A stretch of 64,000 nt of DNA from Marsupella aquatica (Eukaryota; Plantae; Marchantiophyta), in the NCBI GenBank assembly GCA_973895155.1, contig OZ316899.1, positions 6,823,241-6,887,240 on the forward strand, in the 5' to 3' direction. This document shows, piece by piece, positions 4,701-26,999 of this stretch. The translations under genes were made by a program, and so were the position numbers. How positions within the stretch are numbered: position 1 is the stretch's first letter; the number at the start of each line of letters is the position of its first letter. The notes under the pieces were generated by a model. The model was given only the letters and a program-made list of their open reading frames with translations. It was not told where the DNA came from and made no database searches.

Positions 4701-4961
4701 CTGAAGCATACAAGCATACATTCAAGTACTCAAGCAAACAAGTACACAAGTCTTACATGAAAACATGAGAGACAACATAGTTCTATTAGAATCTTAGAAC
4801 TCATATTAACTATTGAACACACATGCATAATTTCATACAAACAAAGTTGTCACAACATGATCAGTGGATGATCCAGTGAATCTCAATTCAACTCTGCATT
4901 ATGAAATATCTCGGTAACATTTGGCACCAATCATGCAGTTGTTTGTAAGTTTAGGCTAAAA

Positions 4962-8407: not shown

Positions 8408-11400
8408 TTATTGCATACGCATGGTGTCAGGCTTAGCCTCTACAAATGGCTCCTCACCCTCCCAAGCATCCACCCGTGTTAGAGGAACATACTCTGTGCT
8501 TGTCTGAACAGTACCAACGTCTCCAGTATGTGGTTGTTCAAATGCACTATGTCTATCTAAATGGAACTCTAGCTTTGACCCTTCTACCCTACGATTTCTG
8601 GGCTGCTTATGACACACTACCCTCCATCCTGGGTTCTCTTCCACATCCAAGAAGAAGGCCTGCTCCACCTGACTGGGATACACAAAAGGCTGCTCCCATT
8701 CGGGCAACTTGGACTTGAAATTGGCAAGCAGAAAGCCATCCCGGTCTCTTTTCATACTGGCCCTGTTACCACGCCACACTTGTCTTACCCATTCACCCTT
8801 CATCAAAATTACAGGAGTGGATGTGGCTCCATAGTCAAGAAGCCAGATATCACTTAGTTCTCCTACATACCCCATCTGCAACACTCCACTACTTTCATCT
8901 GGGCTCTCATGCTGAAATACACAAATGAGCCCACAATCATATGTTACCCTGGAAGAAGTTGTTTCATCTCTCACTCTATAGTGATTGCCATATGCTGCCA
9001 TCCGTTTGTAAGACTTTACCAGCAACCGTGGAGGATTGGAGAGGAGATAGACATCTGCATCCATATTAGGATGGCTTGCATGATGCTCTCGAACTGTGCA
9101 TCTCAGCCATTCTGACATGCATGGGAATGTGGTAGACGTGCTTGATTGAATAGCCTTCTGTGCCTCGTACTCCCTACACATATAAGTGCATGGATTTAGC
9201 AATCAGAGTACACATTCTATACATATCTGCAATTTAGAAACCAAGGGCAGCAAAGAAAATTGAAAACAAGTTACATACAGGGAGACCAAAGTAGGTACTC
9301 ACTCCAGCCAGGGTTGCATTGCATCAGTGTTTTCCAGAACGTACTGATGAGCCAAGTCTCTAATTTCGATGGTCAGCTTCACTGTGGTTGCAGCACCTTG
9401 TAGGACTTCCCCAGACACCCCTTCTTCTTCATCAGAATTCCATACTCGCCTTGTCACATGCTCATAATCTGCTAGGTACTCTGTGATGTAGCCCAGAGTT
9501 TCATCTTTTATATAACCCCAAGCCATACTTGCCTCTGGCCTATAGTAAGATCTCACATGACCTTTCATCAACTTCATGTACCGCTCCAGGGGGTACAACC
9601 AGCGTGCTGTCACCGGCCCGTACTGGTCTATTTCTTCCACAACATGGATGAGCAGATGAGTCATTACATCAAAGAATGCAGGCGGGAAATATATTTCAAG
9701 ATCGCACAACAATAGTGCCACATCTTTCTTCAATTGGGGAAACTGTGCAGCATCCCACACCTTCACACAAACTCTGCGGAACACATCACTCAGACGCAGT
9801 ATAACTTTACGCACAGGCTCTTGCATGAGGCCCCTCAGGCACAATGGCAGGACTTGTTGCATCATGACATGGTAGTCATGGGTTTTCATACTACCAAATT
9901 GGAATTTGTTATCCTTCACATGCCTCTTGAATGCACTAGCATAATCCGTGGGAGCTCGGAGTGAACTCAACCTTGATAAAAAGGTCTGCCACTCTGTGTA
10001 TGTGCAACAATATGGTGCTTGGTACTTCAAAAACACGTTTGCCTTGCTCTGGTGTGATGTAAGCCAAAGGTTGAATTCCCCTGTCCTGTAGATCCATACG
10101 TACAGAGCCCGTGTCCTTTTCTCCACTCAAAAATTGGAGTAGACTCTCGCATATGTTCTTCTCTATGTGCATAACATCAATATTATGTTTGTTTGGATCA
10201 AACTCTTGCAACTCCAAAACATCAAGCAGTGAGCAAATCTCAATCTTCATAATACATACATACTAACTACTTCATACAATCTAACAACTAAATTGACTGA
10301 ATCACATATATGGGTTGTTGGGGAGAGGAGCTTACTCGCCAATACTCCAGCTGCAAGTCCAAAATGGACTGTCATTTCACACCATACAACCTTGCAGGAT
10401 CCCGTACTCCATCCTCTGCTCCTCCATCTGCATCATACTGTGCCTTGGCAGCCCCCCAAGAACTTATTTGCTCCTTCTTCACTCGAGGTTGGGGACTGCG
10501 GAGCTCCGTGCGCTTGTTAAAATGTGCTATAAGATTGGGTCTATGTCTGTAAGGGTGATCAAAGGGCAGAAATTGACGGTGACCCTTTATTTGATACACT
10601 TCAAGGACTTTGAATAGTCACTTGTCACATGGGGGCCACATCTTGTGCAAGCTAAATATCCTTTCCCAACCTGGCCTGCAATCATGCTATGGGCAGGGTA
10701 ATCTGCAATAGTCAACATTACAATAGCTCTAAGCAAGAATGGATTGGCTTCACCAATCCTCTGCAGCATATCATATGTGAGCACTCCAATGTACCATAGC
10801 TTTCTCAGTTCCTCTACTAGAGGAGCGAGATACACATCTATATTGGCTGCAACAGCACTGTCTGGCCCTAGAATCAACAATGCCAACATTACAAAGAACC
10901 GCTTTGTAGTCAACCATGGGGGAAGGTTGTAATTCAAAAGGGTTACAGGCCAACAAGAGTACGCATTGTTCTTCTTGCCAAATGGGTTCACCCCATCCAA
11001 TGATAACCCAAGCCTAACATTCCTTGTCTCCCTAGCAAACTCAGGATACGCATCATCAATCAACTTCCATTGCTTTGAATCTCCAGCATGGCGTTGTAGC
11101 CCATCTCAACTTTTGTTCTTAGCTGCCCATGTCATCAACTCTGATATGGCACGGCTCCTGAACATTCTCTGCAGTCTGGGAATTATAGGAAAGTGACGGA
11201 GCACTTTTGCAGGTTGCTTGGACTTCCCATTGTTCCGGTACCTGTGCTTCCCACATGTAGGGCATGTCAACTTCTTCTGATGTTTGTTTCTGAAAAGAAC
11301 ATGCCCATCAGGACAGACATGTATTGACTCATAGTTCAGCCCAAGTTTTGATATCAGTCTCTTTGCCTCGTACATGTTTTTTGGCACTAGATTACCTCCT

Positions 11401-11907
11401 GGCAGCACTATTTTCTGCAAGAAGGCCAGAACCTCGGACACAAAGATGTTTGGCACATTGTGGTTCCTGGAAAACATCCTGCACCATTTGCTGAACATTG
11501 ATCCCTTCGTTTGTAGGCTGCTGAAGGACTTCGGACCCACCCAGTTGAGTCATCACATCTGCCAACCCACCAGTGAAGAACTGGTCTTGCCTTGCACTAT
11601 TTGCATTCTCAAAGTCAGCCCTCCATTCCTCATCTGAAGAATCAGCCTCATTCGGATCGTTTGTAACACGCCAACGAGGGTGTCTCCCATGAATCTGCCT
11701 CAAGACTCTGGTGTGGGAGCCATTGCATTGAGTGCAAGGACATCTCATTCATGAACTTGGACCTGACCGTGCCACTTTGGCCTGTTCCCAATTCCAGAGC
11801 TTCTGGTCGTGTTGGGAAACCCTCATTGGATGATGTAGAGGCAACCTGGCAGATGTTGGATGGGTCCAAGGGGGAGGGTGACCTATGGACACTCTTCTAG
11901 ACTCCAT
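8408..11907 (-). pseudogene. TnpD: CACTA TnpD transposase (Transposase_21, DUF4218 and DUF4216 regions) with stops, frameshifts and introns
   Basis: Motifs YESIHVCPDGHVLFR, KVLRHFPIIPRLQRMF, RNVRLGLSLDGVNPF, SCWPVTLLNYNLPPW, IDVMHIEKNICESLL, MKTHDYHVMMQQVLP, FPPAFFDVMTHLLIH, WLYPLERYM and PFVYPSQVEQAFF. In-frame TGA at ~11106 and ~10372; frameshifts near 10590 and 10100. Confidence 0.93.
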
Positions 11908-11967: not shown

Positions 11968-12165
11968 TGTTGTAATAGACAACTAAAGGAACGCTCAAAG
12001 ATACTCCAACAAGATAAGATCCATTACTATTGATGAGGGGATATATATATCCCCTTGGTTACATGGTAGGCAAATGCCCTTATACTGGTCCTATGGTTAG
12101 GAGTTCTCATACTATGGTTAAGGGTTCTCGCCCTATGGTTAAGGGGTAAACTAGGGTTTACAACA
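11968..12165 (-). repeat. Copia 3' LTR
   Basis: tgttgtaatagac...gtttacaaca, identical by eye to 17644-17841; contains the palindrome aggggatatatatatcccct. Confidence 0.97.
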
Positions 12166-12669
12166 CTCCCCCTTGGTTAGTTTATGGAGGAGCATAAAGT
12201 AACCACATCTCTTGAACCTAGGGTATAATCCGGTTTAGGGGTCCACCTGTGTGATGTAGCCTCATTAAAACCTCGCCGCTTTCTTCTCGAGGAAAGAGTG
12301 CTACCATCACTTATATAGGTGGTTTCCCATATCTAATGTCCTGGTTAAGCCTTTTTGCCATGTCTTAGTTAGTGTTAATCGTATGTGCTAAGTGGGGTTA
12401 TGTGAATGTTCCTAATGGGTGTCTAGTCTCCCCCTCAGCTCGTTGCCTGGTGTGCGCCTCGTGTTGTTCTTCATGTCGTTTTGCGTATTGCGCTTCGCTT
12501 CGTGTTGTGCTTTGGGTTAGTGAGGCCAAGTCGGGCGTTTTTGCGTTGGTTTGCGTTGTTTCACGTCGGGGATGTGGTGTGGCGCTCGCCGAGTGTGGTG
12601 GTCGGGCATCTGGAGGCGGCTTCATCGGGCGACAGCTTCGTCGTTGGGTAATCCTTTCGAGCTTCAGTG

Positions 12670-15600
12670 TTATGAGGTGGGCTTGATCGTGGACAATCTG
12701 CTCATGCCTATGCCTTCGAGGTGCGCTCTGTGCAATCCGGCTGGTAGTGGTTTCGTAAACATGTCTGCTCGATTGTCCTGAGATTTGATCCATGCAACAT
12801 TGATACTTTTCCCTTGTTGTTCTTGCGTGAAGAAATACTTGGGGTCAATATGCTTGGTCCTCTCGGTCTTCAGGATTCCGTTGGTTATCTGGTCGATACA
12901 CGCCTTATTGTCTTCGTAGATTGTGGTTGGCTCTGTTATCTGTGGTTTACCGGTGCTGGACCTAATATGATTGATAATGCTTCGTAGCCATACAGCTTCT
13001 CTGCACGCCTCGTATAACGCTATGATTTCCGAGTGGTTGGATGACGTTGTGGTCATCGTTTGCTTTGAACTTCGCCAAGATATTGCTGTCGTCCCCTGTA
13101 AGAACACGTACCCAGTCTGTGATTTGGAGTCCTGGGGGTCCGACAGGTAGCCGGCATCAGTGTAACCGGTAAGCGTATCGGGGCTATTCTTAGGAAAGAA
13201 TAGTCCAAGGTCGATCGTCCCTTGTAGGTATCTCATGATCCTCTTGATGCCGTTCCAATGCCTGATGGTGGGCTGTGCGCTGTGTCTCGCTAAGAGACTG
13301 ACGGCGAACGATATGTCAGGTCTCGTCTGGTTCGCTAGATACATAAGGGCGCCCACCGCTGATAGGTACGGTTTTTCTGATCCCAGTATGGGTTCGTCTT
13401 CTTGGCGCTTCCGAAACATATCTTTGATCGGGTCTAGAGATCTGAGTTCCATCGGGGTGGAGACAGGGTAGGATTTCTGCATGTTGAATTGATGAAGTAT
13501 CTTCTGCGTGTATGTCGATTGGTAAAGGAATATGCCTGTTTCTAAGTGTTCGATCTGCAGGCCTAGGCAGTGGTTGGGTCTTCCAAGGTCCTTCATCTCG
13601 AAGACTCCTTTCAGTGTATGTATTGTGTCTTTCATCATCTGTTTAGTCCCGAATAAGTTCACATCGTCCACGTACAGTGCTAGTATCAGGACTTCGTCCA
13701 TATGCTTTTTGATGAAGATGCAGGGGGCCAGTCCGCTATTTGTAAATCCGAGGGCGAGCATCTCTGTCTGGAATTTCTGATACCAGATTCTGCCGCTCTG
13801 TTTAAGTCCGTTGATGGAACGTAACACTTGGACTGTAAGTTTTGTTGTTAATTTCTTTCCTCTGGTATGCATTGCCTGTGTATTTCCACTTTGCATCAAG
13901 AGGGCCTTTGTATCCCCATCAGGTATTATTTGGCTGATGCCCTTTTTAATCTCTGTATTCAGGTTCTGGGACGTCTCCCCCTGAATGTGCTGCTTGACCC
14001 TCTCTATCAGTTCCGGGGGGGCATTCATGTATATCTCAGTATCGAGTGTGCCGTAAAGGTACGCGGTTACCACGTCCATAAGGTTATTAACCAGTTTATG
14101 GTGGACTGAATGTGCTGTGAGATAGCGATATGTAGTAGCGTCCATTACTGGTGAGTATGTTAAATCGTAGTCCCTGCCCGGGATTTGTGTGTAGCCTTTG
14201 GCTACTAGCCGGGCTCGATATCTTACTACTATGCCTTTCTCATTTCGTTTTTTCAAGAATGTAAATCGAGAGTCGGTGTAATGTGTACCTGGTAATGCCA
14301 TTTTAAATGGTCCGAATACTTGTCGCTTGATGAGGGCGTCCATCTCGGTATGTATTGCTGCTTGCCACTTTGGCCAATCTGGTTGTTTCTTTGCCTCGTT
14401 TATAGTGAGCGGATCAGGAATATCGTTGGTGATTTCCTGTATTACGTTATAGGCAAATTGTTCATCAATTTGGGTTGTCGGTCGTTTATATATGTTACCT
14501 GTTTGCATGTATGTGATTGACATTTCCTCGTTTTCTTCGCTCAGTGGGTCGTTTTGATTTATCGCTGTCACGTTAAGTGTGATCGCTGGTTCCAGCGCGG
14601 GTGTACCCAAGTTTGCTGCTGGAGTTTTACGTTGGCGAGGCTGGGAGTCCTTGATCCCTGGTGGTCTGCCTCGCTTTGCTCTGGGGGCTGTTACATTGGC
14701 CGGTGTCGAGGAGGTTTGTACTCGCGATGGCGCATTAGTTGCTAAGTTGTGGGATCTTGTGACATTTGCAGCGTCGTTAAATGAGTCTGGAATCTTTTCG
14801 AGCATTTCATGTAGGTGGAGAAGTCTTCTGACTTCTTCGTCTGCCTGCTTGGTTCTGGGGTCATTTCTGTTTTGGTCTGCTTTCCAATTTATGGGCATTT
14901 TCGTTGTGTCCTTGGATTGTGTTGATGCTGTATTCGTGAGCTGTGGGAATTGATCTTCATAAAAATGGCAGTCCTGATGTCTTGCCTTGAACAGGTCTGC
15001 CGTAGTCGGTTCAAGGTATCTAATGATCGAAGTAGAGTCAAACCCAACATAGATACCTGCATTCCGTTGGGGTCCGAGTTTTGTTCTCTTTGGTCCTAAG
15101 ATAGGCACCATTACCTGGCATCCGAAAATGCATAGGTGGGACAGGTCCGGTGGTATGCCGAACGCCAGGTGGTATGGTGTCTTAGAGTTATATGCTGACG
15201 GTCTATATTGGATTAGTGCAGCTGCGTGAAGGATGGCATGTCCCCATGCTGATGTGGGTAAGTTTGACTTCATTAACAGTGGTCTTGCCACCATTTGAAG
15301 TCTCTTAATAACCGACTCAGCTATACCGTTCTGAAAATGAACGTGGGGAACTGGATATTGAGTATCGATGCCCGCTGCCCAGCAAAAGTCGTCGAATGTT
15401 CTTGATGTGAACTCGCCAGCTCCATCTACTCTTAATCTTCTTGTAGGATACTCTGGGAACTGTGCTCTTAATTTAAGAATATGTGCTAAGATCCGCGCAA
15501 ATGCCAAGTTGCGGGTAGATAGCAATGAAATCTGCAGCCATTTAGTTGATGAGTCGATGATTACCAGGAAATATTTGAAAGGGCCGCTCAGGGGGTCTAT

Positions 15601-17397
15601 AGGTCCGCAGATATCTGCATTGATCTGCTCTAGGAACTGTGGTATTGAAAATATTGTTTTTGGTATTGATGGTCGTATGGTCATTTTTCCTTGTGAGCAC
15701 GCTATGCAGGCTGTTTTTACCTTTGGCTTGACTGTCTTGGGGATTCCTTTGGAGTCCCTTATAATCCTGTTGTACATAGTGGTACCCGGGTGGCCCAGTC
15801 GACAGTGCCAGATGTATGTCATATCCTCTGATTCTTGGTGTATATGGAATGTTTGGATACTGGTTGCGTATAGGCCTGGGGGGATCAATGCAAATGTTTC
15901 TTTAATGGATGGCTTACCCTGTATGTCTTGTATGATCTGTAATGTCTCTGTTTTGCCCTGAGTATTCGTGCGCAGTTGGAGGTTATTGGATCTGATATCC
16001 TGGAAGCTGATGAGGTTTCGGGTTGCTTTCGGGGCATAAATTGCTGACTTCACGGTGATTTTAGTTCCTCCTGGTAGTATAAATGTGGCTCGTCCTTTGC
16101 CTTCTTCTATATGATTAAGTCCTGCTATGGTGGTGATAGCGCGGGATGATGGGGTGATGGCCTCGAAATACTTGCTGTGTTTTAAGATAGTATGTGAGGT
16201 TCCGCTGTCGATGATGCCCGTATCGGGGTCGTCTAATGTCGGGTATTTCCAGTCAGTAAGAGAGGTATGTACTTCTATCTGTTCTTGTGTTTCTTCTCTC
16301 TGAGAGGCAATCAATTCTTCTTCTATCTCCATATAATGTCCTTGGGGGTTTTGTCTGGACTTATTTCTGTCGTTTATGTATCTGTGGGCCTCTTGTTCTG
16401 TGGCTGCACATGCGTTTCTAATGTGGCCAATTTTGCCACATCGGTAACACATTTTCTGGGAATTGTTTGCAGTGTCGTATTGGTTGCTTCGTCCTCTTCC
16501 TCTATTATTCATGGTGCCTCTGCGCCACGTGTTATTGGATCCGGAGGGTCGGTTATAAGGTTTGCCTTGTCCTCTGAATTGATTTCTCCCGCCCCTGAAT
16601 TGGTTTCTTCCGCCTCTGAATTGAGTTCGTCCGCCCCGGTAATTTCCTCGTTGTTTGTCTTCATAATTGGTGTAGTGGGTTTCAGGTCGATGTGGTGGGG
16701 GGTCTGATCCTGCTGGGCGCTTTCTGGCGTTTTGCAAGGCCACGATCTGTTGCTTCTCTTCCACAAGTAAGTGAGCAATCAGATCTGAGTACTTAGTGAA
16801 ACGCATGTTCCTATATTGTGTACCTAATGTGATATTAGATTCAGGGAATGTCGATAGTGTCTTATCGATTCTATCTATGTCATTTATTGGATGTCCACAC
16901 ATTTCTAATTGAGATGTAATTCTGCACAGTGCGCTATTGTAATTGGCAATTGTGGTGTGGTCCATGACGCGCAGGTTATGCCAATCCCTTCTTGCCTCTG
17001 GGAGCCATATCTCCCTCATATGATCAAATCGGGCTTTGAGGAGATCCCATAGTTTTCTTGGATTAATTTCGTTCATATACTCATTCTTTAGTTGAGGGGT
17101 TAGATGTTGCCTGAGTAGAAACGCTGCCTTAGCCTTTTGTTTGAGCGTGACATCGATGTCGGTATCTAAGGTGTCTTCAAGGTCTTGTGATGTAAAGTAA
17201 GTTTCGACATCTGTGATCCACGTCAAATAGTTGGATCCGTCGACTTTAAGTGCTGGCCATAATAATTTTTCGACTGTATTCATTATTCGGGATGTCAGTT
17301 GATTTAAGAACTTTGGTGAAGATTGAATCGAGTGAAGTATCTCGATTGTACAATTGACCGGTTGGAAGCTTGTATATGGAGCTGAGGGAGCTTGCAA
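12670..17397 (-). CDS. Copia Gag-Pol polyprotein (Gag, CCHC knuckle, protease, integrase, RT, RNase H); likely ATG start at 17283
   Basis: CYRCGKIGHIRNAC knuckle; IIDSGTSHT protease; WHCRLGHPG...CIAC and ADICGPI...RVDGAGEF...AE integrase; RARLVAKGYTQ, GLKQSGRIWY and LYVDD RT; GYTDAGY, YEDNKACI and RADMFTK RNase H. Confidence 0.97.
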   Translation of the reverse strand: MQAPSAPYTSFQPVNCTIEILHSIQSSPKFLNQLTSRIMNTVEKLLWPALKVDGSNYLTWITDVETYFTSQDLEDTLDTDIDVTLKQKAKAAFLLRQHLTPQLKNEYMNEINPRKLWDLLKARFDHMREIWLPEARRDWHNLRVMDHTTIANYNSALCRITSQLEMCGHPINDIDRIDKTLSTFPESNITLGTQYRNMRFTKYSDLIAHLLVEEKQQIVALQNARKRPAGSDPPPHRPETHYTNYEDKQRGNYRGGRTQFRGGRNQFRGGRNQFRGQGKPYNRPSGSNNTWRRGTMNNRGRGRSNQYDTANNSQKMCYRCGKIGHIRNACAATEQEAHRYINDRNKSRQNPQGHYMEIEEELIASQREETQEQIEVHTSLTDWKYPTLDDPDTGIIDSGTSHTILKHSKYFEAITPSSRAITTIAGLNHIEEGKGRATFILPGGTKITVKSAIYAPKATRNLISFQDIRSNNLQLRTNTQGKTETLQIIQDIQGKPSIKETFALIPPGLYATSIQTFHIHQESEDMTYIWHCRLGHPGTTMYNRIIRDSKGIPKTVKPKVKTACIACSQGKMTIRPSIPKTIFSIPQFLEQINADICGPIDPLSGPFKYFLVIIDSSTKWLQISLLSTRNLAFARILAHILKLRAQFPEYPTRRLRVDGAGEFTSRTFDDFCWAAGIDTQYPVPHVHFQNGIAESVIKRLQMVARPLLMKSNLPTSAWGHAILHAAALIQYRPSAYNSKTPYHLAFGIPPDLSHLCIFGCQVMVPILGPKRTKLGPQRNAGIYVGFDSTSIIRYLEPTTADLFKARHQDCHFYEDQFPQLTNTASTQSKDTTKMPINWKADQNRNDPRTKQADEEVRRLLHLHEMLEKIPDSFNDAANVTRSHNLATNAPSRVQTSSTPANVTAPRAKRGRPPGIKDSQPRQRKTPAANLGTPALEPAITLNVTAINQNDPLSEENEEMSITYMQTGNIYKRPTTQIDEQFAYNVIQEITNDIPDPLTINEAKKQPDWPKWQAAIHTEMDALIKRQVFGPFKMALPGTHYTDSRFTFLKKRNEKGIVVRYRARLVAKGYTQIPGRDYDLTYSPVMDATTYRYLTAHSVHHKLVNNLMDVVTAYLYGTLDTEIYMNAPPELIERVKQHIQGETSQNLNTEIKKGISQIIPDGDTKALLMQSGNTQAMHTRGKKLTTKLTVQVLRSINGLKQSGRIWYQKFQTEMLALGFTNSGLAPCIFIKKHMDEVLILALYVDDVNLFGTKQMMKDTIHTLKGVFEMKDLGRPNHCLGLQIEHLETGIFLYQSTYTQKILHQFNMQKSYPVSTPMELRSLDPIKDMFRKRQEDEPILGSEKPYLSAVGALMYLANQTRPDISFAVSLLARHSAQPTIRHWNGIKRIMRYLQGTIDLGLFFPKNSPDTLTGYTDAGYLSDPQDSKSQTGYVFLQGTTAISWRSSKQTMTTTSSNHSEIIALYEACREAVWLRSIINHIRSSTGKPQITEPTTIYEDNKACIDQITNGILKTERTKHIDPKYFFTQEQQGKSINVAWIKSQDNRADMFTKPLPAGLHRAHLEGIGMSRLSTIKPTS

Positions 17398-17629
17398 TCA
17401 TGCCAATAAAGTATTAGTCCTTTGGACTCTCGATATGCTGGTCCCGAATTGATGCTCTATGTGAAATTTCGTGTTTTGTAAAAAAAATTCAACTCTGAGG
17501 CAAAAGAATGGAGACCAAGAAAAAAAAACGGTTATGGCAGTTTCTAAAAAAAATGCCACTTTACGAGCATTCTCCTCGTGTAAAACTCGATTGCATCTGC
17601 TTGAAAAAAAATGATTTTTAGAGACTGGC

Positions 17630-17643
17630 TCGTGCTGATAACG
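17630..17643 (-). promoter_or_regulatory. Copia primer-binding site, half-tRNA (Ile anticodon-arm) type
   Basis: The minus strand reads CGTTATCAGCACGA directly after the 5' LTR, with no TGG. It is complementary to the tRNA-Ile anticodon arm UCGUGCU(I)AUAACG as I recall it. Confidence 0.7.
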
Positions 17644-17841
17644 TGTTGTAATAGACAACTAAAGGAACGCTCAAAGATACTCCAACAAGATAAGATCCAT
17701 TACTATTGATGAGGGGATATATATATCCCCTTGGTTACATGGTAGGCAAATGCCCTTATACTGGTCCTATGGTTAGGAGTTCTCATACTATGGTTAAGGG
17801 TTCTCGCCCTATGGTTAAGGGGTAAACTAGGGTTTACAACA
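17644..17841 (-). repeat. Copia 5' LTR
   Basis: Identical to 11968-12165. Confidence 0.97.
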
Positions 17842-18202
17842 GAAAATACATTTCTTGTATAGCTGTGTTCCGATGTTCACACAATCTACCAAAACATATG
17901 ACATGATACAGTGTAATAAATCATGCATAGACTTTCTACAACCACCAAAAAACAAACAAGAAAGGTTCCTGAATTGTGTACCTATTCTCAGGTCACACTG
18001 TAACAAAATTCCTAACTGTCTCAGGGTGTCACCTCCTTCGCTGTCCTCACTTATACTGCCTCAGTCTGCAATGGCCAACCAAGCACGTACATCCATGACC
18101 ATATCAGAGTCCAATCACCTATAGTCATAGACAAACGTGCTTGGCGTGAGGGCAGTATGAGATCTCCTCACGTTATTACCAGAGTTCATCTGGATACCCA
18201 CC

Positions 18203-18778
18203 CTATTCTCGATGGTAGTCACACCTGAGGTACACTGGCATGTATATCAGGTCATCAAAGAGTATGCCCTGGGCATACCAGGGTGGGGTTCGATCTGTGC
18301 CTCCAAGAAGTGGTTCTAATGCCCTCCACTGGGGGGAGCTAGCTACCAAGTCCCTCCATTGTGTGCTAATTAGTCTATATTTGCAAATGTCTTGTGCATT
18401 TGACCACAGAAGAATTCTGGGCCACACATCTGACAGCATTATATCATCTGGCAAACCAGGCAACAAGGAAATCCCCACAACATTATGCTCTTCTATTTCA
18501 TCTGCTGAAAAATAAGATTCATCGTCTCTTGCATCCTCAGGCGGTGCCAAAATATGTTTCAACACCAACCCATGCAGGAGAGTCCAAACAGTGGCCAGCC
18601 ATGTGGCAACCCACAGGAGGAACCTACATAGCGCCTGGTGATGTAGGAAAGGCAACATACCCACCAAAGTCTGCCGCCAAGATTTGAGCCCACCCCCAGT
18701 AAGTTTACAGTGACACCCCCAGGCAGCAGGAAACAACAATCCGCCAACAGTAAAATAAGTCCAACTGCAACCAACCAT
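18203..18778 (-). CDS. CACTA cargo: F-box-like protein with N-terminal hydrophobic segment(s); C-terminus probably decayed
   Basis: LLPGLPDDIMLSDVWPRI...CKYRLISTQWRDLV matches the plant F-box pattern (LPGLPDD...R.VS..W..LV). The hydrophobic stretch FLLWVATWLATVWTLLHGLVL lies upstream. Confidence 0.65.
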   Translation of the reverse strand: MVGCSWTYFTVGGLLFPAAWGCHCKLTGGGLKSWRQTLVGMLPFLHHQALCRFLLWVATWLATVWTLLHGLVLKHILAPPEDARDDESYFSADEIEEHNVVGISLLPGLPDDIMLSDVWPRILLWSNAQDICKYRLISTQWRDLVASSPQWRALEPLLGGTDRTPPWYAQGILFDDLIYMPVYLRCDYHRE

Positions 18779-18869
18779 AACAAGCTACGTTAGTTCAAAT
18801 ATCACATTTATTTAAAAGATGTGATTTGTACAAAAAGCTTGTCTCAAAACTGATGCTACTATGTACTCC

Positions 18870-19742
18870 TCACTCTGATTCAGAATCGCTAATAACCCCT
18901 TCCTCACTTGTTGTCACATAGTTTTCACTATGAGGATCCTGACCCTTCCGTGGCCAGGCCTCAAAAAGATCATAGTCCATTGGGTTTTGACGCTTCCCAG
19001 CTGCTACTGATTCCACAAGCCAAGCATATGAAACCACAAACACATTATGGGACATGACATAAAAGTGAATGTCACCCTTCCCAAACTTGCGGCAGGCTTT
19101 GGGATATGACTTAGTAATGACATGAGTGGTGTCCTCTGTTATATTCTCCTCCACTGTCCCACCTAGGTCAAGCACTATGGACTTGTACACTTTGCACTTA
19201 ACCTCTCCAATTCCCGCCTCCACAAAGACCATGCTCAGCCCTTTCAGAATGGGGGTTGGTTGCTTCATCTCCTCAGCCAACATACTCTTCAGCCTTCTTG
19301 AGCTTTGTCCTTTGTTGAGTACAGGTCCATATTGGACATCAGCAAGCCGTGCCTTTGCTTCCCAGACTTCTTGTTCAGCCCAAGCTGATGCAGTAGCTTC
19401 TTCATCCTCCCACAGTTCATATTGCTCAGTATCCTGTACAATCTGATGTGCTATGGAATCTGTGATCCAAGAGGCCTCAACTACTTTTAGGCCTCGCTCA
19501 GTAATTGCAGAATTCATGTAGGACCATGACCACTTCTTTATCACTGATAGCCATGTCCCTGCAACAACATGTGTAGTCTCTGGAGTGATGTCCTGCACTA
19601 CAGTGCCATGGAGCTCAGAGAATCGTTTCTATACAGTTGGCCAATGCACTTTGGTCAACCCATGCTGGCCATGGACCAAAATGGCTCTGACCCCTGTAAA
19701 CACTGCTGGGTGGTCACACTTTCTACGTTTCCCAGGCTCCAT
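18870..19742 (-). pseudogene. CACTA cargo: tandem BRCT-domain protein (Pol-lambda-like BRCT) with one in-frame TAG at 19629-19631
   Basis: From ATG 19742: MEPGKRRKCDHPAVFTGVRAILV...V*KRFSELHGTVVQDITPETTHVV...VVEASWITDS. Second repeat: LKGLSMVFVEAGI...LGGTVEENITEDTTHVI...VVSYAWLVESVAAGKRQNPMDY. The BRCT GG, THV and W..(D/E)S hallmarks are present. Confidence 0.85.
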
Positions 19743-20328
19743 GTACACACACCCTACGTTATCAGAGTGAATATTGGAAGAATGGGTTCACCTGCCAATA
19801 GAAGGACACCAAAATTCCTGCTTTTTAAGTTGATCTGGTCCACTGTTGCTCAAGTCCAATTTTGATAGGTACAGGGGATATGTGAACAATAAGTACTAGA
19901 CACCTGCACCGATGTAGGACATTGTTTGAGTATATACTAGGAAATCCATATCAAAGGTGAAATGAAGTGCAACCAACTTGTCATGGCCGCACATACATAT
20001 TTTGTTGTAAAGGAGGATACATTCAATGACAAACTTATAGGGCAATTTGATTAATTGCATGCCTGATACTTACAACTTTGAAGTCCTGTTTTAATTTAGC
20101 AGTCTGATGAGAGTGTTTGTGAAAATGACCACTCAGTCTAAATACTTCCAAGAAGGCTTGTAAGGATAAGTTTTTATAGGCATGTACCTAGCCAATAACG
20201 CTAGGGCACAGGATAAGTGCTCCCTATATAAACTCGCCTACCCAACTCCTGTTCAAAATTGGAATCTCTGCAATCTCCAAAAACAGTACATCCACATTAG
20301 GTGTCCTATGCATGTACAATGTTCAGCT

Positions 20329-21009
20329 TCACAGCCAAGATATGTGATCTCTCACAGGAGTGCGCGAGGTAGGATCAATGGCATGGCGATGACAATAAAA
20401 TATCCATCGATCAACACCATGTGCAGAGTGATCATAGATTTCTCTGTCACAAGCATAACCCTGTGCTTGAAAATCTTTCAAGCAATGATAGTGCCACATA
20501 GTGGGACACCTAGCACAGTGGACTATGTCAGCCCAGTACTCATCATCATGCTCACCACATGCCTTGCACCTATGAAGTGGGCAAGCTGTGGCATGAGCAG
20601 GCAAACACTCAAAACAGAAAAACCTCACACAAAAACGGTCTGGACATTTCCTAACATCCGGTGCAGCATCAATAGAGCCCTCATAGGACCCCAACTTCCC
20701 ACATTGTGCACACTTAGCCTGCTTCTCCAAACAATCAGTGCACATCTAGTCTCCCTGGTGTGTTGACAGGAGGCCCACCCCTGGACAGTTGTTTTCTGCA
20801 GCAAGGTGAGACTCTGGGTTGAGGTGGAAATGCCTCATGCAAGGGCCCTCACAGATGACCAAGCTCCCACCATCGTCACAAATGGCACAACAATGAGCTG
20901 CCTTCTGGAAAATCTGACTTGCAGAGAAGTTAGTAACATGTGGCCCAGGTACACCTGTGTTGCTCACCTCTATCACACGCTTTTTTGTTGGAATTTTGGG
21001 GCGTGCCAT
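20329..21009 (-). pseudogene. CACTA cargo: EDM2-like tandem PHD-finger cassette with one in-frame TAG at 20746-20748
   Basis: Read through the stop: MARPKIPTKKR...CAICDDGGSLVICEGPCMRHFH...*MCTDC...CAQCGKLGS...CPLHRCKAC...CARCPTMWHYHCL...IFYCHRHAIDPTSRTPVRDHISW. This is co-linear with the EDM2 PHD region as I recall it (CAICDNGG..CCEG.CLRSFH ... CPLHKC..C ... CRRCPKSYHRKCL ... IYC..HEID..L.TPVRDH). Confidence 0.85.
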
Positions 21010-21775
21010 ACCTACGCATGAGACAGACAGTACAATTAAGTAGATGGTACAGGCAATACATTTTGGCAGACTGTACAGACAATGTATTTTAGCAAACTTC
21101 ACAGAAAGTAAAATTTAGCATTTAAGGTACAAAGGCATTAACTACTGCAATGAATTGCAATGCCCACACAAGGATGCAGAGCAGACATACTTTTGGTTTG
21201 TTGAGCCCACACACAAAATTGAACCCCTAGTACAATTGCTCCACCAACACCTCAAATTCGTGGATGTGATTCACCAAAAGAGATCTGCAACAACATTTCA
21301 TGCATTTGAATCACATACAATAGTCATCACATGAAAAATAGGCATTTTTCCAACAAGATTGGGATCAAGCAGTGTGATGAGGGTTGTACTTTATACATCC
21401 TATATAGGCTATGATAGTGAGACAAATAAGTCATACGTGTAAGGGATGTGTCATACGTGTTAGGGATGTTTGCAGGTTATCGCATGGCCCATTAATTCTG
21501 TCATAGAATGTTACAATGTTGGTCAAGTTAAAGTAGACATTAAAGCAGTCTTTGAATGGAGAATTTAAAGAGAGCTTGCTTAATTCTTACATTAGAATAT
21601 TCCACTTAGTGCACCCAAAATAGGATAAGTTATATACTCTGGACCCTAAACACTTTACCCAAAATTGCTCATACTTCAAAATTTTAAATTAATATCCTTG
21701 GTGCTTAAGTCAGAGCATTAAGTGTGAGGTCATTCCACTATGGTCTGTGCATACGGGGTGACAAACTGTGCTCCT

Positions 21776-22225
21776 CTACAGCGTGTGATCCAAACATGTG
21801 TAGACACCAAAAGCACCAGTGGTGGGGTCTGGGAGGCCAGAACAAGTGACATCGCCAGGCACACTACAGGATGGCGAGTGGTTCCAGATGATACATTGTG
21901 CTCTATGCAAAAATCGACATCCAAGAGAACGGTCATCCAACTCTGGGCCAGATGCCCGACAGGCAGGACAGTCATATTGGCAACTGTGTACACACCCTTG
22001 GGCCCTAATTTGTGGCGGGTCATGTACGAGAGACAGAAATACCAAGGATGTTGGGAAGGGTGGAGAAGTAGGTACAGGCCGGCTGTAGTTATTCCTGGCA
22101 ACAACAGGGTACTCAAAGTACCATGCAGACTGGGCAGGAAGGATCCCAAGTCTGACATACTCAAGGCACAACCTCTCTGCCTTGCGTGCAAGCCGCACAT
22201 GTTCAGCATTGTGGGTGCTCACCAT
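21776..22225 (-). CDS. CACTA cargo: Cys/His-rich ORF of unknown function, probably decayed
   Basis: GCVHSCQYDCPAC...CRFLHRAQC...C; co-oriented with the other cargo ORFs; its 5' part is conserved in the sister copy at 1-200. Confidence 0.4.
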   Translation of the reverse strand: MVSTHNAEHVRLARKAERLCLEYVRLGILPAQSAWYFEYPVVARNNYSRPVPTSPPFPTSLVFLSLVHDPPQIRAQGCVHSCQYDCPACRASGPELDDRSLGCRFLHRAQCIIWNHSPSCSVPGDVTCSGLPDPTTGAFGVYTCLDHTL

Positions 22226-24209
22226 AACTGTTGCTTTTGTTCAGATGTCTTGTGTTCACGTCCTCCAACGTCCTTTGATCAGCAAGGTGAGCAGGAGCTG
22301 TACTTGCCTCACCAACAACAACCAACCTGAACTTATCAATTCCCACTCACTGTGTCATTCCCTTGGTTCCAACTAGAGGTCATAGTATAAACATAGCATG
22401 AAACACTCCTAATGAACAATGTTGCAAAGTACAATATCCAGAAAGACTGAAAGTCTCACCCTGCAGTGAGCAACAGAGAGGTAGTTCACTGCTTGCAAGA
22501 GTGAACTGAGTAGGAGTGTAGGCAGACTGGCATTCAGTTGGCACAACTATATTGTGCATCAGCACAAAAGCTCTTATGAACATGATATGCATGAAACTCG
22601 TCGATAAAATAGAAGGAAACTAAAGAGTGGATGCAAAACAAAGCAAATTACAGCACAGGTCGGCACAGGAAGTGGCCCGCAGCACTCAGTCAAACTTCAT
22701 AACCAAAGTACAGACTGTGTTCACAATAAGGAGCTTCCTAAAAAAGAGGCGGGTGGCAGAAAGGTCACTTGACAAAATGAAGATGGGATGAAAAAACTGC
22801 CGCCAAGCTCAATACATGTGACCAAATATATATTCAAAGAGGATCCCCAACAGAGCAGAAGACACTATGATCCCAATTACTATGTTCTATCCATAACTAC
22901 ACGATCTGAAAAATGTTATGAGCAGACATGAAGAAGCCAGCAAAATAGAGGAAACAGAGCAAAACAGAGCATGGATCGAGAAAATGAACAACATCTAGTT
23001 CTTACGCAAGAAACTCAGTGACAGCAAACAAATTCACTAGCCCCAGGAAGTGAAAAGCAAATGAGTACCAAGCCAACCAACTAAGACTGACTATGAAATG
23101 CAAGTGACATCATTTCAACCAAAAAATACAATAAAGCACTTAGGCAACATTAATATAGAAGTGTAGTGGAATTATATCATGCGACAGATAGTACTTGGTT
23201 CTACCTAAGGTGTACAGGCATACTGCCCTCAGGTAGAATGTGTATGCAGTTACATACACATGAGGATCCCCAACAAAGCACACAACAATATGATCTGAAT
23301 TCCCAATTACTCTGTTCTGTCCATACCTATGTTCATCAAAAAATGTTATGAGCAGACATTGAGAAGCTAGCAAAATAGAGGAGCCAATCGAAGCCAAAAT
23401 ACTACATTCAAATACAAGCTCACAAATAGGACTGAATTAGAACTCTTGCCTTTTTGCACTCCACCTGCACCAAAATGAAGTCTTAATACCAGGGACACAA
23501 AGAACACAAAACAAATGCCTGAGCACATTCAAAGACAAAGTGATTCATGAATAGCACATTCAAAGACAGAGCGGAAAGAATTGAAAAAACCTGAGTGCAA
23601 CAATTGTTCACACACGCACGGGACATTGGAGGTTGAATACAGCAGTCACCGCCAAGAATGTATGCATGAAACAGACATGAAGATATCGAATATGCATATG
23701 CATTCCAGACTTTCATGCCAGACAGTGGCGAAAGTTAAAATGAACTAGTTTTGACTTTATGACTCTCAGAATGAAAATATTTTATTTCAGAATTATATTC
23801 TATTTCAGAATTGGTTCAACTCTGTGGATTGTGAACTGTCCCACTTGGAATTCCACTATTTGGGCTATCTAAGAATGCAGTTCAAAGGACATACAGTGCA
23901 AGACAGTTAGAGATCATGTCTTCATTCCGACGTCCAATTGGACATTTTATGTCACAAACTGCGCATGCAATGAAGTCCATGGAATTGTCTCAAAAATGCA
24001 GCTTTTGTTGTTGGTAAAAGCAACTACAAGTTTCCTATTGAGTGCCCCCGACGCACAATACTACCAGAGGCCCACTTTAGACTGCAATGGCTGTCATTAC
24101 TTATTGGGAACTCGGATGCATATATGTTGAAATGCTTCGCAGAGTGTTCCGACCACAAAAAACCTAACATCAATCTCAACATTCAGTCCTGTCTCAGAAT
24201 TGATTTAGA
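22026..24209. repeat. Internal CACTA segment, direct repeat of 1-1965
   Basis: See 1-1965. Ends at the uninterrupted AGA target site (24207-24209). Confidence 0.9.
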
Positions 24210-26376
24210 GGAGGCTTAGCATTCAATACAGTGTCAACAATCAGTCTTGTCTTCACATTCAACATCCGATTGCAAGGGGCTTTGATGAAAGCACAAGACA
24301 GAGCTATAGAAGAAGAGACAGAGGAAGGCACCTGTGTGTTCGGGGAAAATGTGAAGCTCCAAAGACCACCCTAAACTCTCCAAGATGTAGGGTCGATGTA
24401 GGTGGCAAGTAGAAGCTCACAAGCCAAATATTGGGCGAATGTGGGCTCCAATTGTACTGTAGTGTGTCATGGCTCTGCTCCTGCCTCCTATAGCTTAGAA
24501 TGGGCCGGGGGTTACCAAACAACTGTTATTCTATTGAAATTGGCTACAGAGAACTCTTGTCTTTCTACACTCCACCTGCACCAAAGTGAAGTCTTAGTAC
24601 CAGTGAGACCAAGAACACAAAAGGAAGGGGCACATTCAAAGACAAAGTGATTCATACCACATTCAAAGACAAAGCGGAAAGAATTGGAAAAACCAGAGTG
24701 AAAGAATTGCGAATGAATATCTGTTCACACTGTATGCACGGGATCTTACATTTAGGGTGACTCTATTTGCAAAAGCCATAAAACAGAGAAACAAAGACCA
24801 GAAAACAAAGAAACAGAGACCAGAAAACAGAGAAACAAATTAAGCATGCATCGCTGAAACGTAAAAACTTCACAGTGTATCATTTCTCTAAACAAAGGGC
24901 CACATACTCTGGTCTCTATAGAGAAAGCAAATCCAGCTACGATGAGAAGATTGGTACAGAACAGGAGAGAAAAGGGAGACCAGAACAAGTATTTAAAATT
25001 AGAACAAGAAGACTGGCAATTTAAGGAACCCTAGGGAGCCTATTGCATTTGAATCACATACAGGACCCTAGCATACTCATAGTGGGGCACTAGATACTGG
25101 GCAAACTCAAGGTAATGGTCAGAATGAAACTAGAAAGGTCTTGAAGTTGCCAGGTCCCGCAGTTGCCAGGTCCCGCCTCGTTCCTCTTGCACTTTGCAGA
25201 AAACAAGATGCAGAAAACTAACCTATAGCTCCAACCGGCTGTAGTTGACTGAGCTGCAGCAAGTTATGAAGACAGGTCGTCCCCAGTGGCACCTTGTCCC
25301 TGCCTTTAGCTCGTCCTTCACCGCAAGTCTTAGAGCTGCTCAGCAAACACAGCAGCTCGGCACCACAGCTAATAGATGGCTAAATAATGGGATCATGTGC
25401 AAAGGGAAATGAGCCATGAAGCGAAGGGAAGCGATCAGTTCCGGCACCCAATAGCTGAAATGACCTCACTGACAGTTGGCATCTATGCAGATAGATCGAG
25501 GTCTTGTCACTAAGTTAGACACAATTTATGGTGAGAGTGTGAGTGTGAGTGTGAGGTTCCAGAGAAGGCTAAAGGACCTCTGCAATGCAAAATGTGGTGC
25601 GAATGGAGCCGCGAGGTGAACAATAAGTTGGTGATAAAACCGGGCAGCATACATAACACCAGACCAAAGACACAAATGACCAAACCAAAAGACGCTTTCA
25701 CCAACAATGCATATTCAGGACATGAGTGAATGGAAAGAAGCAAGAGAGATACAGGGATTACAAAAAAAGACTAGGCCCTCATCTGTCCAGACTTCTGTAG
25801 GACTCCACTAACTCCATTGTCCTTCTCAGATCCCCAAGAAGTCCATGAAGCAACGAAGAACCTGGGCAATGTGACGTAAGGACAGTAGCAACAGTACATA
25901 CACATAAGAATGAAAGGCTGGTTCGGGGCAGCACAAGCAAGCAATGCGACCCCCTTTCACTCACCATCCCATGACCAATGATAACGGATGAAAAACTGAA
26001 CCTGAAATCTGGGTCGCGCGTTCGACCTGAAAGTGGTCAGCTCCAAGGCTACCTACCTACCCCTTCATTGCTCCGCAGCTGAGCTCAATGAAGTATAGAA
26101 AGTGGGTGAGGATCCCGTCATAGTTCAGCTCCTGTGCCCTCATGGCATTTGAAACAAAAAGAGCCAAAACCAATGCAGAACCTCAGTAGGATGAACGACT
26201 CCCCGACAGAGACTAGTCCCTTCTCTCCGGCAGCTCACAAATCCACAATTGCAATGGTTCTGCTCAGTCAGCCAAGAACACCCTAAAATCTACGAAAACA
26301 ATGGGCGACAGAGGAGTTTGTAAGTGATTCTCACTTGAAATTCCGCCAGCTGAATCTTCCTTGTTAGAAGGTCTGC

Positions 26377-26905: not shown

Positions 26906-26999
26906 CAAACCAAAGATCTTTGGTTCTTAGCCCTAAACACCCCGGTTTCTGCTGCTGTGATTACAACATGCAACCCCGCCTATGCTGCTATAACAAATT

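What the first reader, a model, noticed from the sequence alone, without database searches (positions are those of the whole stretch)
18203..22225. CACTA transposon carrying an accessory cassette (EDM2-type PHD, tandem BRCT, F-box, Cys-rich ORF): candidate anti-silencing or chromatin-targeting system
Seen: four compact, apparently intronless ORFs lie in tandem on the same strand, directly upstream of TnpD and TnpA and inside the reconstructed TIR boundaries. Two start with basic NLS-like peptides (MARPKIPTKKR, MEPGKRRK). Each is trimmed to an interaction domain and strongly diverged at protein level while keeping its structural residues. The sister copy at 1-1965 shares the adjoining segment and the 5' part of the Cys-rich ORF, so at least part of this region is family-wide. 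Known: PHD fingers read histone marks, BRCT domains recruit repair factors, and F-boxes couple to SCF ubiquitin ligases. VANDAL Mutators encode VANC anti-silencing proteins. Inference: these may be element-maintained genes that sense heterochromatin, steer repair or remove host silencing factors, rather than passive Pack-CACTA debris. I know of no description of this combination, but could not search.
Basis: partly seen in the sequence, partly recalled or inferred. Interest (0 to 1): 0.9.

Follow-up and report, generated by a model that had tools for sequence, protein, structure and literature searches.

The report
CACTA transposon with PHD, BRCT, F-box genes
A decayed copy of a very abundant plant (liverwort-type) cut-and-paste transposon carries, just upstream of its transposase, three extra genes (a histone-tail reader, a twin-BRCT protein and an F-box protein) that related transposons have kept intact under selection, so they belong to the transposon and probably help it deal with host chromatin.

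Summary
On the minus strand, directly upstream of a Tnp2-type CACTA transposase, lie an EDM2-like triple-PHD gene (20329-21009), a two-BRCT gene (18870-19742) and an F-box gene (18203-18658/18778). The Cys-rich ORF (21776-22225) has no domain and no relative outside this genome.

In this copy the PHD gene, the BRCT gene and the transposase N-terminus each carry one in-frame stop, and a young Copia sits between the F-box gene and the transposase. This copy is dead.

The genes are not debris:
- Intact homologues at 46-87% (PHD) and 55-59% (BRCT) identity occur on other contigs in the same order.
- PHD is followed by the transposase in four lineages, and by BRCT in L001 (where F-box follows) and L007.
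- dN/dS is 0.28, 0.44 and 0.49, with bootstrap intervals below 1.
- The stand-alone PHD proteins form one deep clade apart from host EDM2.

The exact TIRs at 1966 and 4056 join the two sides of one AGA target that is uninterrupted at 24207-24209, which points to a transposase-made rearrangement.

Function (anti-silencing, targeting or repair) is inferred only, and expression was not shown. The scan noted this cassette on other DNA of this genome, and one follow-up reached the same reading. No paper describing it was found.

The parts
1..1965 (-). End of a sister copy: 5' leader segment 'A' plus the first 66 codons of the Cys-rich ORF (1-200). The rest of that copy lies before the window.
   Evidence: 95-96% identical to 22026-23408 and 23623-24209. 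The ORF is open in the same frame. Earlier scan notes place PHD and BRCT ORFs just before the window start (not checked here).
1966..4055 (+). Segment that starts with an exact CACTA TIR (1966-1984) and a cluster of TGAC-type subterminal motifs (to about 2250) and ends with 'f' (3888-4055). It has no coding signal. Read as a 5'-terminal element segment in inverted position.
   Evidence: 3888-4055 is 97% reverse-complementary to 24207-24375.
4056..4800 (-). 3' end of the main copy: exact TIR (4056-4074) and the subterminal motif region.
4962..8190 (-). ORF fragments in the position of TnpA. Identity not verified.
   Evidence: No Pfam family found. Repeated GHTVVYG motif in 7233-7868.
8408..11907 (-). 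TnpD-type transposase in several ORF pieces. In-frame stop at 11749-11751 before the CPC zinc motif.
   Evidence: Transposase_21 E 9e-50, DUF4218 E 7e-27, DUF4216 E 1e-5. The N-terminus aligns with the Transpos_assoc ORF of L005.
11968..17841 (-). Young Copia retrotransposon inserted into the 5' part of the TnpD unit. Not part of the cassette.
   Evidence: 198-bp LTRs 100% identical. TSD GAAAA. Open 1575-aa polyprotein.
18040..18130 (-). Conserved block after the F-box stop. Likely holds the TnpD start codon and splice-like signals.
   Evidence: Nearly identical between the window and L001, although their coding DNA is only about 68% identical.
18203..18778 (-). F-box gene. The conserved Met is at 18658, giving 151 aa. 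There is no LRR, WD40 or Kelch domain.
   Evidence: PF00646 at 21.6 bits. Homologous ORF in L001 after the BRCT gene, 44-50% identity, dN/dS 0.49.
18870..19742 (-). Two-BRCT gene of 290 codons, with a nonsense codon at 19629-19631 in BRCT1.
   Evidence: Pfam. Intact 294-295 aa homologues P0001 and P0002. dN/dS 0.44. Model and fold matches.
20329..21009 (-). Stand-alone EDM2/NSD-type triple-PHD gene of 226 codons. A nonsense codon at 20746-20748 replaces a conserved Trp.
21776..22225 (-). Cys-rich ORF of 149 aa. Coding status unproven.
   Evidence: No Pfam hit and no homologue. The region is covered by very many contigs in two organisms.
22226..24375 (-). Non-coding 5' leader of the main copy (A' to 24209, F' from 24207). 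It contains the uninterrupted AGA site at 24207-24209 and a 214-bp insertion at 23409-23622.
26922..26959 (-).
   Evidence: 29 of 36 bases match the 4056 end, but the terminal CACTAG is changed, no TSD matches and there is no motif cluster.

Best explanation
The region is the 5' half of a dead copy of an autonomous, very high-copy CACTA (En/Spm) family of a liverwort-type plant genome.

Gene order, shown. Between the 5' leader and the transposase the family carries three separate genes on the transposase strand, each with its own conserved start and stop:
- a 226-aa protein that is only an EDM2/NSD-type PHD-Zn-PHD histone-H3-tail reader module;
- a ~290-aa protein with two BRCT domains joined by a long linker;
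- a ~150-aa F-box protein.

These are selected accessory genes of the element. PHD is the core gene, found next to TnpD in every lineage sampled. BRCT and F-box are additions in a subset of lineages.

Mechanism, inferred. The PHD protein binds a defined H3-tail state and so places the element's proteins on particular chromatin, either its own silenced copies or target sites. The F-box protein plugs into host SKP1/SCF to ubiquitinate a host protein there. The BRCT protein binds phosphoproteins of the double-strand-break response at excision or integration sites.

My single most likely reading, at about 0.35, is counter-silencing by removing or displacing a chromatin-bound host factor. Chromatin-guided target choice is about 0.3, and repair steering alone about 0.15.

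In this copy the PHD gene, the BRCT gene and TnpD are each broken by a stop, and a Copia has landed in the TnpD unit.
For: - Domains.
- Intact homologues: 220-226 aa (PHD) and 294-295 aa (BRCT).
- Conserved order: L001 runs PHD end, BRCT, F-box, TnpD-start block. L002/L003, L005/L006 and L008 run PHD then a Transpos_assoc ORF. L007 runs PHD then a diverged BRCT.
- In the window the F-box stop is about 100 nt from the conserved TnpD start block, and TnpD resumes right after the Copia insertion.
- dN/dS with bootstrap intervals: 0.28 (0.18-0.44), 0.44 (0.32-0.63), 0.49 (0.31-0.79).
- The stand-alone PHDs form one clade (SH-aLRT 99, stem 1.65) apart from about 120 EDM2-like proteins.
- The PHD model has pLDDT 82. 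Its best fold matches are H3-tail-binding PZP and NSD PHD-C5HCH modules.
- The BRCT model has two BRCT folds.
- Thousands of short contigs cover the cassette in two organisms.
- Earlier scan notes list the same cassette at five or more other places in this genome (these are leads, not tested here).
Against: - No expression evidence. No listed run is on record as RNA, and the library type of the Logan contigs is unknown.
- No biochemical function was tested.
- The F-box Pfam score is only just above its cut-off here and is below it in L001.
- The canonical pSer-binding Ser of BRCT1 is not conserved across the three sequences, and the two BRCTs are not predicted to pack together (pTM 0.39).
- The Cys-rich ORF has no support outside this genome.
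- No complete copy bounded by TIRs with a TSD was recovered, so 'inside the element' rests on synteny.
- dN/dS of 0.3-0.5 is moderate, and only one or two pairs per gene were available.
Confidence: 0.78

Rival explanations
1. Passive capture (Pack-CACTA). The ORFs are host-gene fragments picked up by one element and amplified with it, with no role for the element.
For: CACTA elements are known to capture host fragments (established knowledge). The copy in the window has stops in PHD and BRCT. Each ORF is a bare domain.
Against: Open homologues at 46-59% identity keep the same order next to transposases in several lineages. dN/dS intervals are below 1. The PHD genes form a monophyletic deep clade only 35-40% identical to EDM2. 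The element is autonomous in type.
Confidence: 0.05
2. The ORFs are not separate genes. They are alternative exons of the single En/Spm-style transcription unit and yield fusion isoforms, such as PHD or F-box joined to TnpD or TnpA by splicing.
For: En/Spm makes TnpA and TnpD from one promoter by alternative splicing (established knowledge; also cited in PMC13547354). All ORFs share the transposase strand. The conserved block after the F-box stop has acceptor-like and donor-like sites. Earlier scan notes describe a SET exon inside the TnpD unit of other CACTA families of this genome (not tested here).
Against: Each ORF keeps a conserved Met start (MAR.K; MxPGKRRK) and a conserved stop position across 46-59% divergence. 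The contigs are colinear with the genome, with no sign of splicing.
Confidence: 0.1
3. The cassette is a host gene cluster, or a set of domesticated genes, that only happens to lie beside CACTA remnants. The two local copies arose by segmental duplication.
For: No TIR-to-TIR copy with a TSD was recovered. The exact TIRs at 1966 and 4056 do not enclose the cassette in a simple way. The two local copies are adjacent.
Against: The F-box stop lies about 100 nt from the TnpD start block. The same adjacency appears on unrelated contigs from other samples. The contig load is extreme, with thousands of pieces in two organisms. Earlier notes report copies megabases apart.
Confidence: 0.04

Closest known systems
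VANC anti-silencing proteins of VANDAL (Mutator-like) transposons of Arabidopsis
   Same: An autonomous DNA transposon carries extra, fast-evolving genes beside the transposase that are kept by the element.
   Different: Different superfamily (CACTA, not MULE). No sequence relation. The proteins here are recognisable host-type modules (PHD, BRCT, F-box). No demethylation or anti-silencing activity is shown.
Host EDM2 (ENHANCED DOWNY MILDEW 2) PHD module
   Same: Same three NSD-type PHD Pfam families. EDM2 proteins are the nearest long relatives, at 35-40% identity over the module.
   Different: EDM2 is about 1200-1300 aa with the module at about residues 220-430. The transposon protein is the module alone, with a basic H3-like N-terminus. 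It sits in a separate deep clade.
PZP (PHD-Zn knuckle-PHD) and NSD PHD5-C5HCH histone H3-tail readers (BRPF1, JADE1, AF10, NSD1-3)
   Same: Best structural matches of the predicted model: Foldseek probability 0.96-1.0, and TM-score normalised to the target 0.56-0.64 for the NSD tandems.
   Different: Sequence identity is 18-24%. Whole-module TM-scores are low (0.20-0.29 on the query), so the domain arrangement may differ. Peptide binding is untested.
Viral and bacterial F-box effectors (polerovirus P0, nanovirus Clink, Agrobacterium VirF)
   Same: A genetic parasite encodes a small F-box protein without a classical substrate domain in order to hijack host SCF. This is analogy from established knowledge only.
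   Different: No homology was tested or found, and there is no PDB sequence match at all. The target is unknown.
Other accessory genes of DNA transposons: ULP1/Peptidase_C48 in MULE/CACTA, TET/JBP in fungal KDZ/CACTA-like elements, SET genes noted by this scan in CACTA of the same genome
   Same: Chromatin or protein-modification modules carried next to the transposase (PMC12973397 and PMC12730594; scan notes).
   Different: Different domains. Here there is a reader, a phospho-binding scaffold and a ubiquitin-ligase adaptor rather than an enzyme.

Membership tests
CACTA / En-Spm superfamily | Terminal inverted repeat beginning CACTA | tested here: met
   Exact 19-nt CACTAGTAGAAACCGGGGT at 1966 and 4056; none expected by chance.
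CACTA / En-Spm superfamily | 3-bp target site duplication | tested here: met
   AGA (TCT on the other strand) flanks both TIR ends, and the same site is single and uninterrupted at 24207-24209. The two ends are not in the simple inverted arrangement.
CACTA / En-Spm superfamily | Tnp2/TnpD-type transposase | tested here: met
   Transposase_21 E 9e-50, DUF4218 and DUF4216. The N-terminus is homologous to the Transpos_assoc ORF of L005.
CACTA / En-Spm superfamily | Subterminal repeat clusters | tested here: met
   TGAC-type motifs are enriched only at 1966-2250 and 4056-4800.
CACTA / En-Spm superfamily | Second protein TnpA | tested here: inconclusive
   ORFs lie in the expected place, but none has a Pfam family.
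EDM2 orthologue | Composite NSD-type PHD module | tested here: met
   PF23011, PF22908 and PF23004. Named EDM2 proteins are among the hits.
EDM2 orthologue | Full-length architecture of about 1200-1300 aa and placement within the EDM2 clade | tested here: not met
   The proteins are 220-226 aa and stand alone. They form a separate clade with SH-aLRT 99.
BRCA1-type tandem BRCT (phosphopeptide-binding pair) | Two BRCT folds | tested here: met
   Pfam reports two stretches. The model has two BRCT folds, and Foldseek gives E about 1e-11 to Rad4/TopBP1/BRCA1 pairs.
BRCA1-type tandem BRCT (phosphopeptide-binding pair) | Short linker with tight head-to-tail packing, and a conserved Ser/Gly/Lys phosphate pocket | tested here: inconclusive
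   The linker is about 55 residues and of low confidence, and pTM is 0.39. The position of the pocket Ser reads H, P or S in the three sequences.
Pol lambda / family X polymerase BRCT | Specific sequence relation to Pol X BRCT domains | tested here: not met
   The best PDB sequence match is the TdT BRCT at E 0.06, which is not significant. The fold matches are generic.
F-box protein (SCF substrate adaptor) | F-box motif | tested here: met
   PF00646 at 21.6 bits against a cut-off of 20.5 in the window, and 17.2 bits in L001. The LPxx...W.R.LV pattern is conserved in both.
F-box protein (SCF substrate adaptor) | SKP1 binding and a substrate-recognition domain | not testable with these tools
   No LRR, WD40 or Kelch domain was found. 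Binding needs an experiment.
Pack-CACTA (passive gene-fragment carrier) | Non-autonomous element; fragments close to their host parents; no selection on them | tested here: not met
   A transposase is present. Identity to EDM2 is 35-40%. dN/dS is 0.28-0.49.
VANC-type anti-silencing system | Element-specific loss of DNA methylation caused by the accessory protein | not testable with these tools
   No methylation or expression data were available. There is no sequence relation.

The most novel reading that the evidence does not exclude
A whole lineage of bryophyte CACTA transposons encodes a three-part host-manipulation kit: an H3-tail reader, a BRCT scaffold and an SCF adaptor. The kit would find the element's own heterochromatin and destroy or displace a host silencing or repair factor there. 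The reader protein also begins with a histone-H3-like tail (MARTKQ / MAR.K). That tail could act as a histone mimic, either as a decoy for host H3 readers and writers or as an autoinhibitory pseudo-ligand for its own PHD fingers.
Probability: 0.25. Interest if true: 0.9.

Novelty: new variant of a known kind. Interest (0 to 1): 0.7.

Why it matters
Few transposon-encoded counter-defence or targeting factors are known in plants. VANC in VANDAL and a microRNA in a rice CACTA are the usual examples (PMC12973397).

Here a very successful DNA transposon lineage has kept three recognisable host-type interaction modules for a long time: a histone reader, BRCT domains and an F-box. Each has a standard assay (histone-peptide binding, SKP1 binding, partner pull-down). 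That makes the question of how a plant DNA transposon negotiates with chromatin, ubiquitin and repair pathways directly testable. It also gives a natural stand-alone EDM2-type reader for comparison with host EDM2.

No paper linking CACTA elements with EDM2-type PHD, BRCT or F-box genes was found in four searches.

Tried and rejected
- Cys-rich ORF: no Pfam family, no relative in the word-indexed search (the full HMMER job was run on PHD only) and none in the fetched loci, and no similarity to the PHD family. The Atlas was busy twice.
It is only a 36-nt terminal-like remnant.
- TnpA: no Pfam hit in six ORFs.
- Pol-lambda origin of the BRCT domains: not supported.
- Self-docking of the H3-like N-terminus: the AF2 model leaves residues 1-28 disordered.
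- Identity of the SRR18067xxx project that supplied the homologues: two paper searches were blank, so it is unknown whether those contigs are RNA or DNA.
- Metagenome scan for longer related loci: it gave one 1.5-kb contig only.
- P0001's contig could not be fetched.
- Read laying depth cannot be read as copy number. I used only where contigs lie, and as a hint that coding blocks recruit more contigs than spacers do.
- The careful tree search did not finish, so the quick IQ-TREE result is reported.
- The 'breaks' near 22404-22425 suggested by loose ends are only diverged variants of the same sequence.
Full report
**1. What is in the window**

The window is a nest of eukaryotic transposons, with GC content of 40-55%. 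The minus strand between 4056 and about 24400 reads as follows, 5' to 3':
- a non-coding leader (24375 down to 22226);
- a Cys-rich ORF (22225-21776);
- a PHD gene (21009-20329);
- a two-BRCT gene (19742-18870);
- an F-box gene (18778/18658-18203);
- a short conserved block (18130-18040);
- a Copia retrotransposon, which is a later insertion (17841-11968);
- a Tnp2-type CACTA transposase in pieces (11907-8408);
- unassigned ORFs in the TnpA position (8190-4962);
- a subterminal motif region and an exact CACTA TIR (4800-4056).

Supporting calls are 1, 3-6, 8, 14, 35 and 81.

Pfam results:

| ORF | Pfam family | Score |
|---|---|---|
| F-box | F-box | 21.6 bits, cut-off 20.5 |
| BRCT | BRCT | E 1.7e-13, two stretches |
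| PHD | PHD-1st_NSD, PHD_NSD, PHDvar_NSD | |
| Transposase | Transposase_21 | E 9e-50 |
| Transposase | DUF4218 | E 7e-27 |
| Transposase | DUF4216 | E 1e-5 |

The Copia element has identical 198-bp LTRs, a GAAAA target duplication and an open 1575-aa polyprotein. It is therefore recent and tells us nothing about the cassette.

**2. State of this copy**

- The PHD reading frame is a single 226-codon ORF cut by TAG at 20746-20748, where all homologues have Trp.
- The BRCT frame is a single 290-codon ORF cut by TAG at 19629-19631, where the homologues have Gln.
- The TnpD N-terminus has TGA at 11749-11751, just before its CPC zinc motif, and the next part is in another frame.

The copy is dead.

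**3. Are the genes the element's own?**

*Homologues.* A database search with the BRCT ORF found only two proteins, of 294 and 295 aa, both intact and 59% and 55% identical. The PHD piece found intact proteins of 226, 220 and 225 aa at 87%, 80% and 46% identity.

*Gene order on the contigs that carry them:*

| Contig(s) | Order |
|---|---|
| L001 | last codons of a PHD ORF, BRCT, F-box, then the same block as window 18040-18130 |
| L007 | PHD, then a very diverged BRCT ORF (23% identity, E 5e-11) |
| L002/L003, L005/L006, L008 | PHD, then 360-650 nt later an ORF with the Transposase-associated zinc motif of CACTA TnpD |

PHD next to TnpD is thus a recurrent architecture in at least four diverged lineages. 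BRCT and F-box occur in a subset.

*Spacing in the window.* The F-box stop lies about 100 nt from the conserved block, which begins ATG GTC ATG GAT. TnpD coding resumes immediately beyond the Copia insertion. No space is left for an element boundary.

*Selection.* Pairwise dN/dS (Nei-Gojobori, 300 codon bootstraps):

| Gene | Pair | dN/dS | Bootstrap interval |
|---|---|---|---|
| PHD | window vs L004 | 0.28 | 0.18-0.44 |
| BRCT | window vs L001 | 0.44 | 0.32-0.63 |
| F-box | window vs L001 | 0.49 | 0.31-0.79 |

More distant PHD pairs are saturated. The flanks are less conserved than the coding DNA: 78% and unalignable, against 87% for PHD vs L004. Between the window and L001 only the ORFs and the block after F-box align at all.

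*Origin of the PHD module.* An exhaustive HMMER search with the intact PHD protein gave 250 hits. About ten are short stand-alone proteins. Most of the remainder are long proteins matched at about residues 220-430, and those looked up are named ENHANCED DOWNY MILDEW 2. There are also liverwort proteins of 692-747 aa. In a quick maximum-likelihood tree of 132 modules, the stand-alone proteins (window, P0003-7, 9, 11, 12) form one clade with SH-aLRT 99 and a stem of 1.65 changes per site, apart from all EDM2-like rows. The careful search did not finish, and the root is arbitrary.

*Abundance.* Laying contigs of four runs on 18250-24249 showed thousands of short contigs at 90-100% identity in two organisms, and fewer in two more. 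The family is highly repeated and shared by related species.

Together these results exclude near-identical host fragments, a single-locus oddity and neutral evolution.

**4. The Cys-rich ORF**

It has no Pfam family and no homologue in the protein database. It has no counterpart upstream of PHD in L005 or the other loci and no similarity to the PHD family.

Both local copies are open over the shared 66 codons, with 6 replacement and 4 silent differences, which says nothing either way. The stretch recruits the most contigs, so it is conserved among genomic copies. That could equally reflect a cis-acting sequence.

I leave its coding status open.

**5. Boundaries**

The exact 19-nt TIR occurs at 1966 and at 4056, both pointing rightwards. 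Each is followed by a TGAC-motif cluster, but the two have different internal sequence. They are therefore the two unlike ends of the family.

The base triplet left of 1966 is AGA, at the end of segment A. The triplet left of 4056 is TCT, at the end of segment f. In the main copy, A' and the reverse complement of f are contiguous and share a single AGA at 24207-24209. Both TIR ends were therefore joined to the two sides of one target with a 3-bp duplication, which is the CACTA hallmark. The arrangement, however, is not a simple insertion.

The most economical reading is a single reversed-ends transposition. The 5' end of the sister copy and the facing 3' end of the main copy would have been inserted together into the AGA site inside the sister copy's leader, inverting 1966-4055. 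The alternative is two nested insertions into the same site. Either way, A and f are element-internal leader, and the cassette lies inside the element.

One point is unexplained. The main copy loses homology to the 5'-terminal segment at 24375.

Its first bases are changed, it has no matching TSD (TCT against ATT or TGA) and it has no motif cluster. The right boundary is unresolved.

**6. What the proteins look like**

*PHD protein.* The AlphaFold model built from 30 sequences has pLDDT 81.7 and pTM 0.76. Residues 1-28 are disordered. The best structural matches are the H3-tail-binding PZP modules of BRPF1, JADE1, AF10 and PHF14, and the NSD1-3 PHD5-C5HCH tandems (probability 0.96-1.0; whole-module TM-scores are low).

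*BRCT protein.* The model has two BRCT folds (pLDDT 75-86) separated by a low-confidence linker of about 55 residues, with pTM 0.39. The fold matches are generic BRCT pairs. The only PDB sequence hint to a family X polymerase is the TdT BRCT at E 0.06, so 'Pol-lambda-type' is not supported.

*F-box protein.* The F-box pattern is conserved, preceded by a conserved hydrophobic and then an acidic stretch. There is no known substrate domain and no PDB relative.

**7. Mechanism**

Shown: element-linked genes under selection, of reader, BRCT and F-box type.

Inferred from what these domain families do elsewhere: the PHD protein binds a defined H3-tail state, the F-box protein recruits host SCF, and the BRCT protein binds phosphoproteins of the break response.

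| Reading | Probability |
|---|---|
| Counter-silencing by removing or displacing a chromatin-bound host factor | about 0.35 |
| Chromatin-guided target choice | about 0.3 |
| Repair steering alone | about 0.15 |
| Other | the remainder |

No expression data exist here. No run is on record as RNA, and the library type of the SRR18067xxx contigs could not be established.

**8. Comparison with earlier work and novelty**

Transposon accessory genes are a known kind: VANC, MURB, ULP1 and TET/JBP. I found no paper that links CACTA elements with EDM2-type PHD, BRCT or F-box genes.

The scan itself has noted this cassette at five or more other places in the same genome. One follow-up on another piece reached the same conclusion for PHD and BRCT. 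Other follow-ups call the genome liverwort-type and describe SET genes in other CACTA families. I treated these as leads only.

My rating is a new variant of a known kind.

**9. Procedure notes**

- Broken genes were searched as separate pieces or through intact natural homologues.
- For the tree, the window's PHD was read through its stop with X.
- In one script I read the TnpD frames across the Copia insertion site by leaving the Copia out. This was for inspection only, and nothing joined was sent to a search.

Noticed in passing
window 20977-21009 (minus); proteins P0005, P0008, P0016, P0012, P0119, P0131: The stand-alone PHD proteins begin MAR[P/T/C]K. Three begin MARTKQ, MARTKV or MTRTKQ, which are the first residues of histone H3. 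This may be a histone-tail mimic on a histone-tail reader, or only a basic nuclear-localisation signal.
   Followed up: partly
window 18040-18130 (minus); L001:2310-2402: A ~90-nt block after the F-box stop is far better conserved between two lineages than their coding DNA. It holds a likely TnpD start codon plus TTGCAG and GTGAGG splice-like sites.
   Followed up: partly
window 1963-1984, 4053-4074, 24195-24222: Two same-direction TIR ends are joined to the two sides of one AGA site that is intact in the neighbouring copy. This is the signature expected of reversed-ends (alternative) transposition, or of repeated insertion into the same site.
   Followed up: partly
window 11968-17841: Apparently young Copia element: identical 198-bp LTRs, TSD GAAAA and an open 1575-aa polyprotein.
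   Followed up: partly
window 26374-26959: A tandem duplication with a period of about 290 bp (87% identity) lies next to a 36-nt CACTA-terminus-like sequence whose first bases read CACAGCAGCAG instead of CACTAGTAG.
   Followed up: partly
window 23409-23622 and 24550-24709: A 214-bp insertion is present in this copy's leader and absent from the sister copy. A related sequence (84.5% over about 168 nt) lies 1 kb away. It is probably a small mobile element.
   Followed up: no
window 57165-58369: Tandem array of six copies with a 181-bp period (72-95% identity).
   Followed up: no
window 7233-7868 (minus): An ORF in the TnpA position has a thrice-repeated GHTVVYG.P motif in a Pro/Gly-rich stretch. 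No Pfam family matches.
   Followed up: no
window 27661-30225 (plus): LINE remnant with endonuclease (Exo_endo_phos) and reverse transcriptase (RVT_1) ORFs.
   Followed up: partly
window 34387-35106 and 63269-64000: Inverted repeats of several hundred bases, 88-89% complementary, lie 28-29 kb apart and bracket a block of minus-strand ORFs with internal 8-13 kb direct repeats.
   Followed up: no
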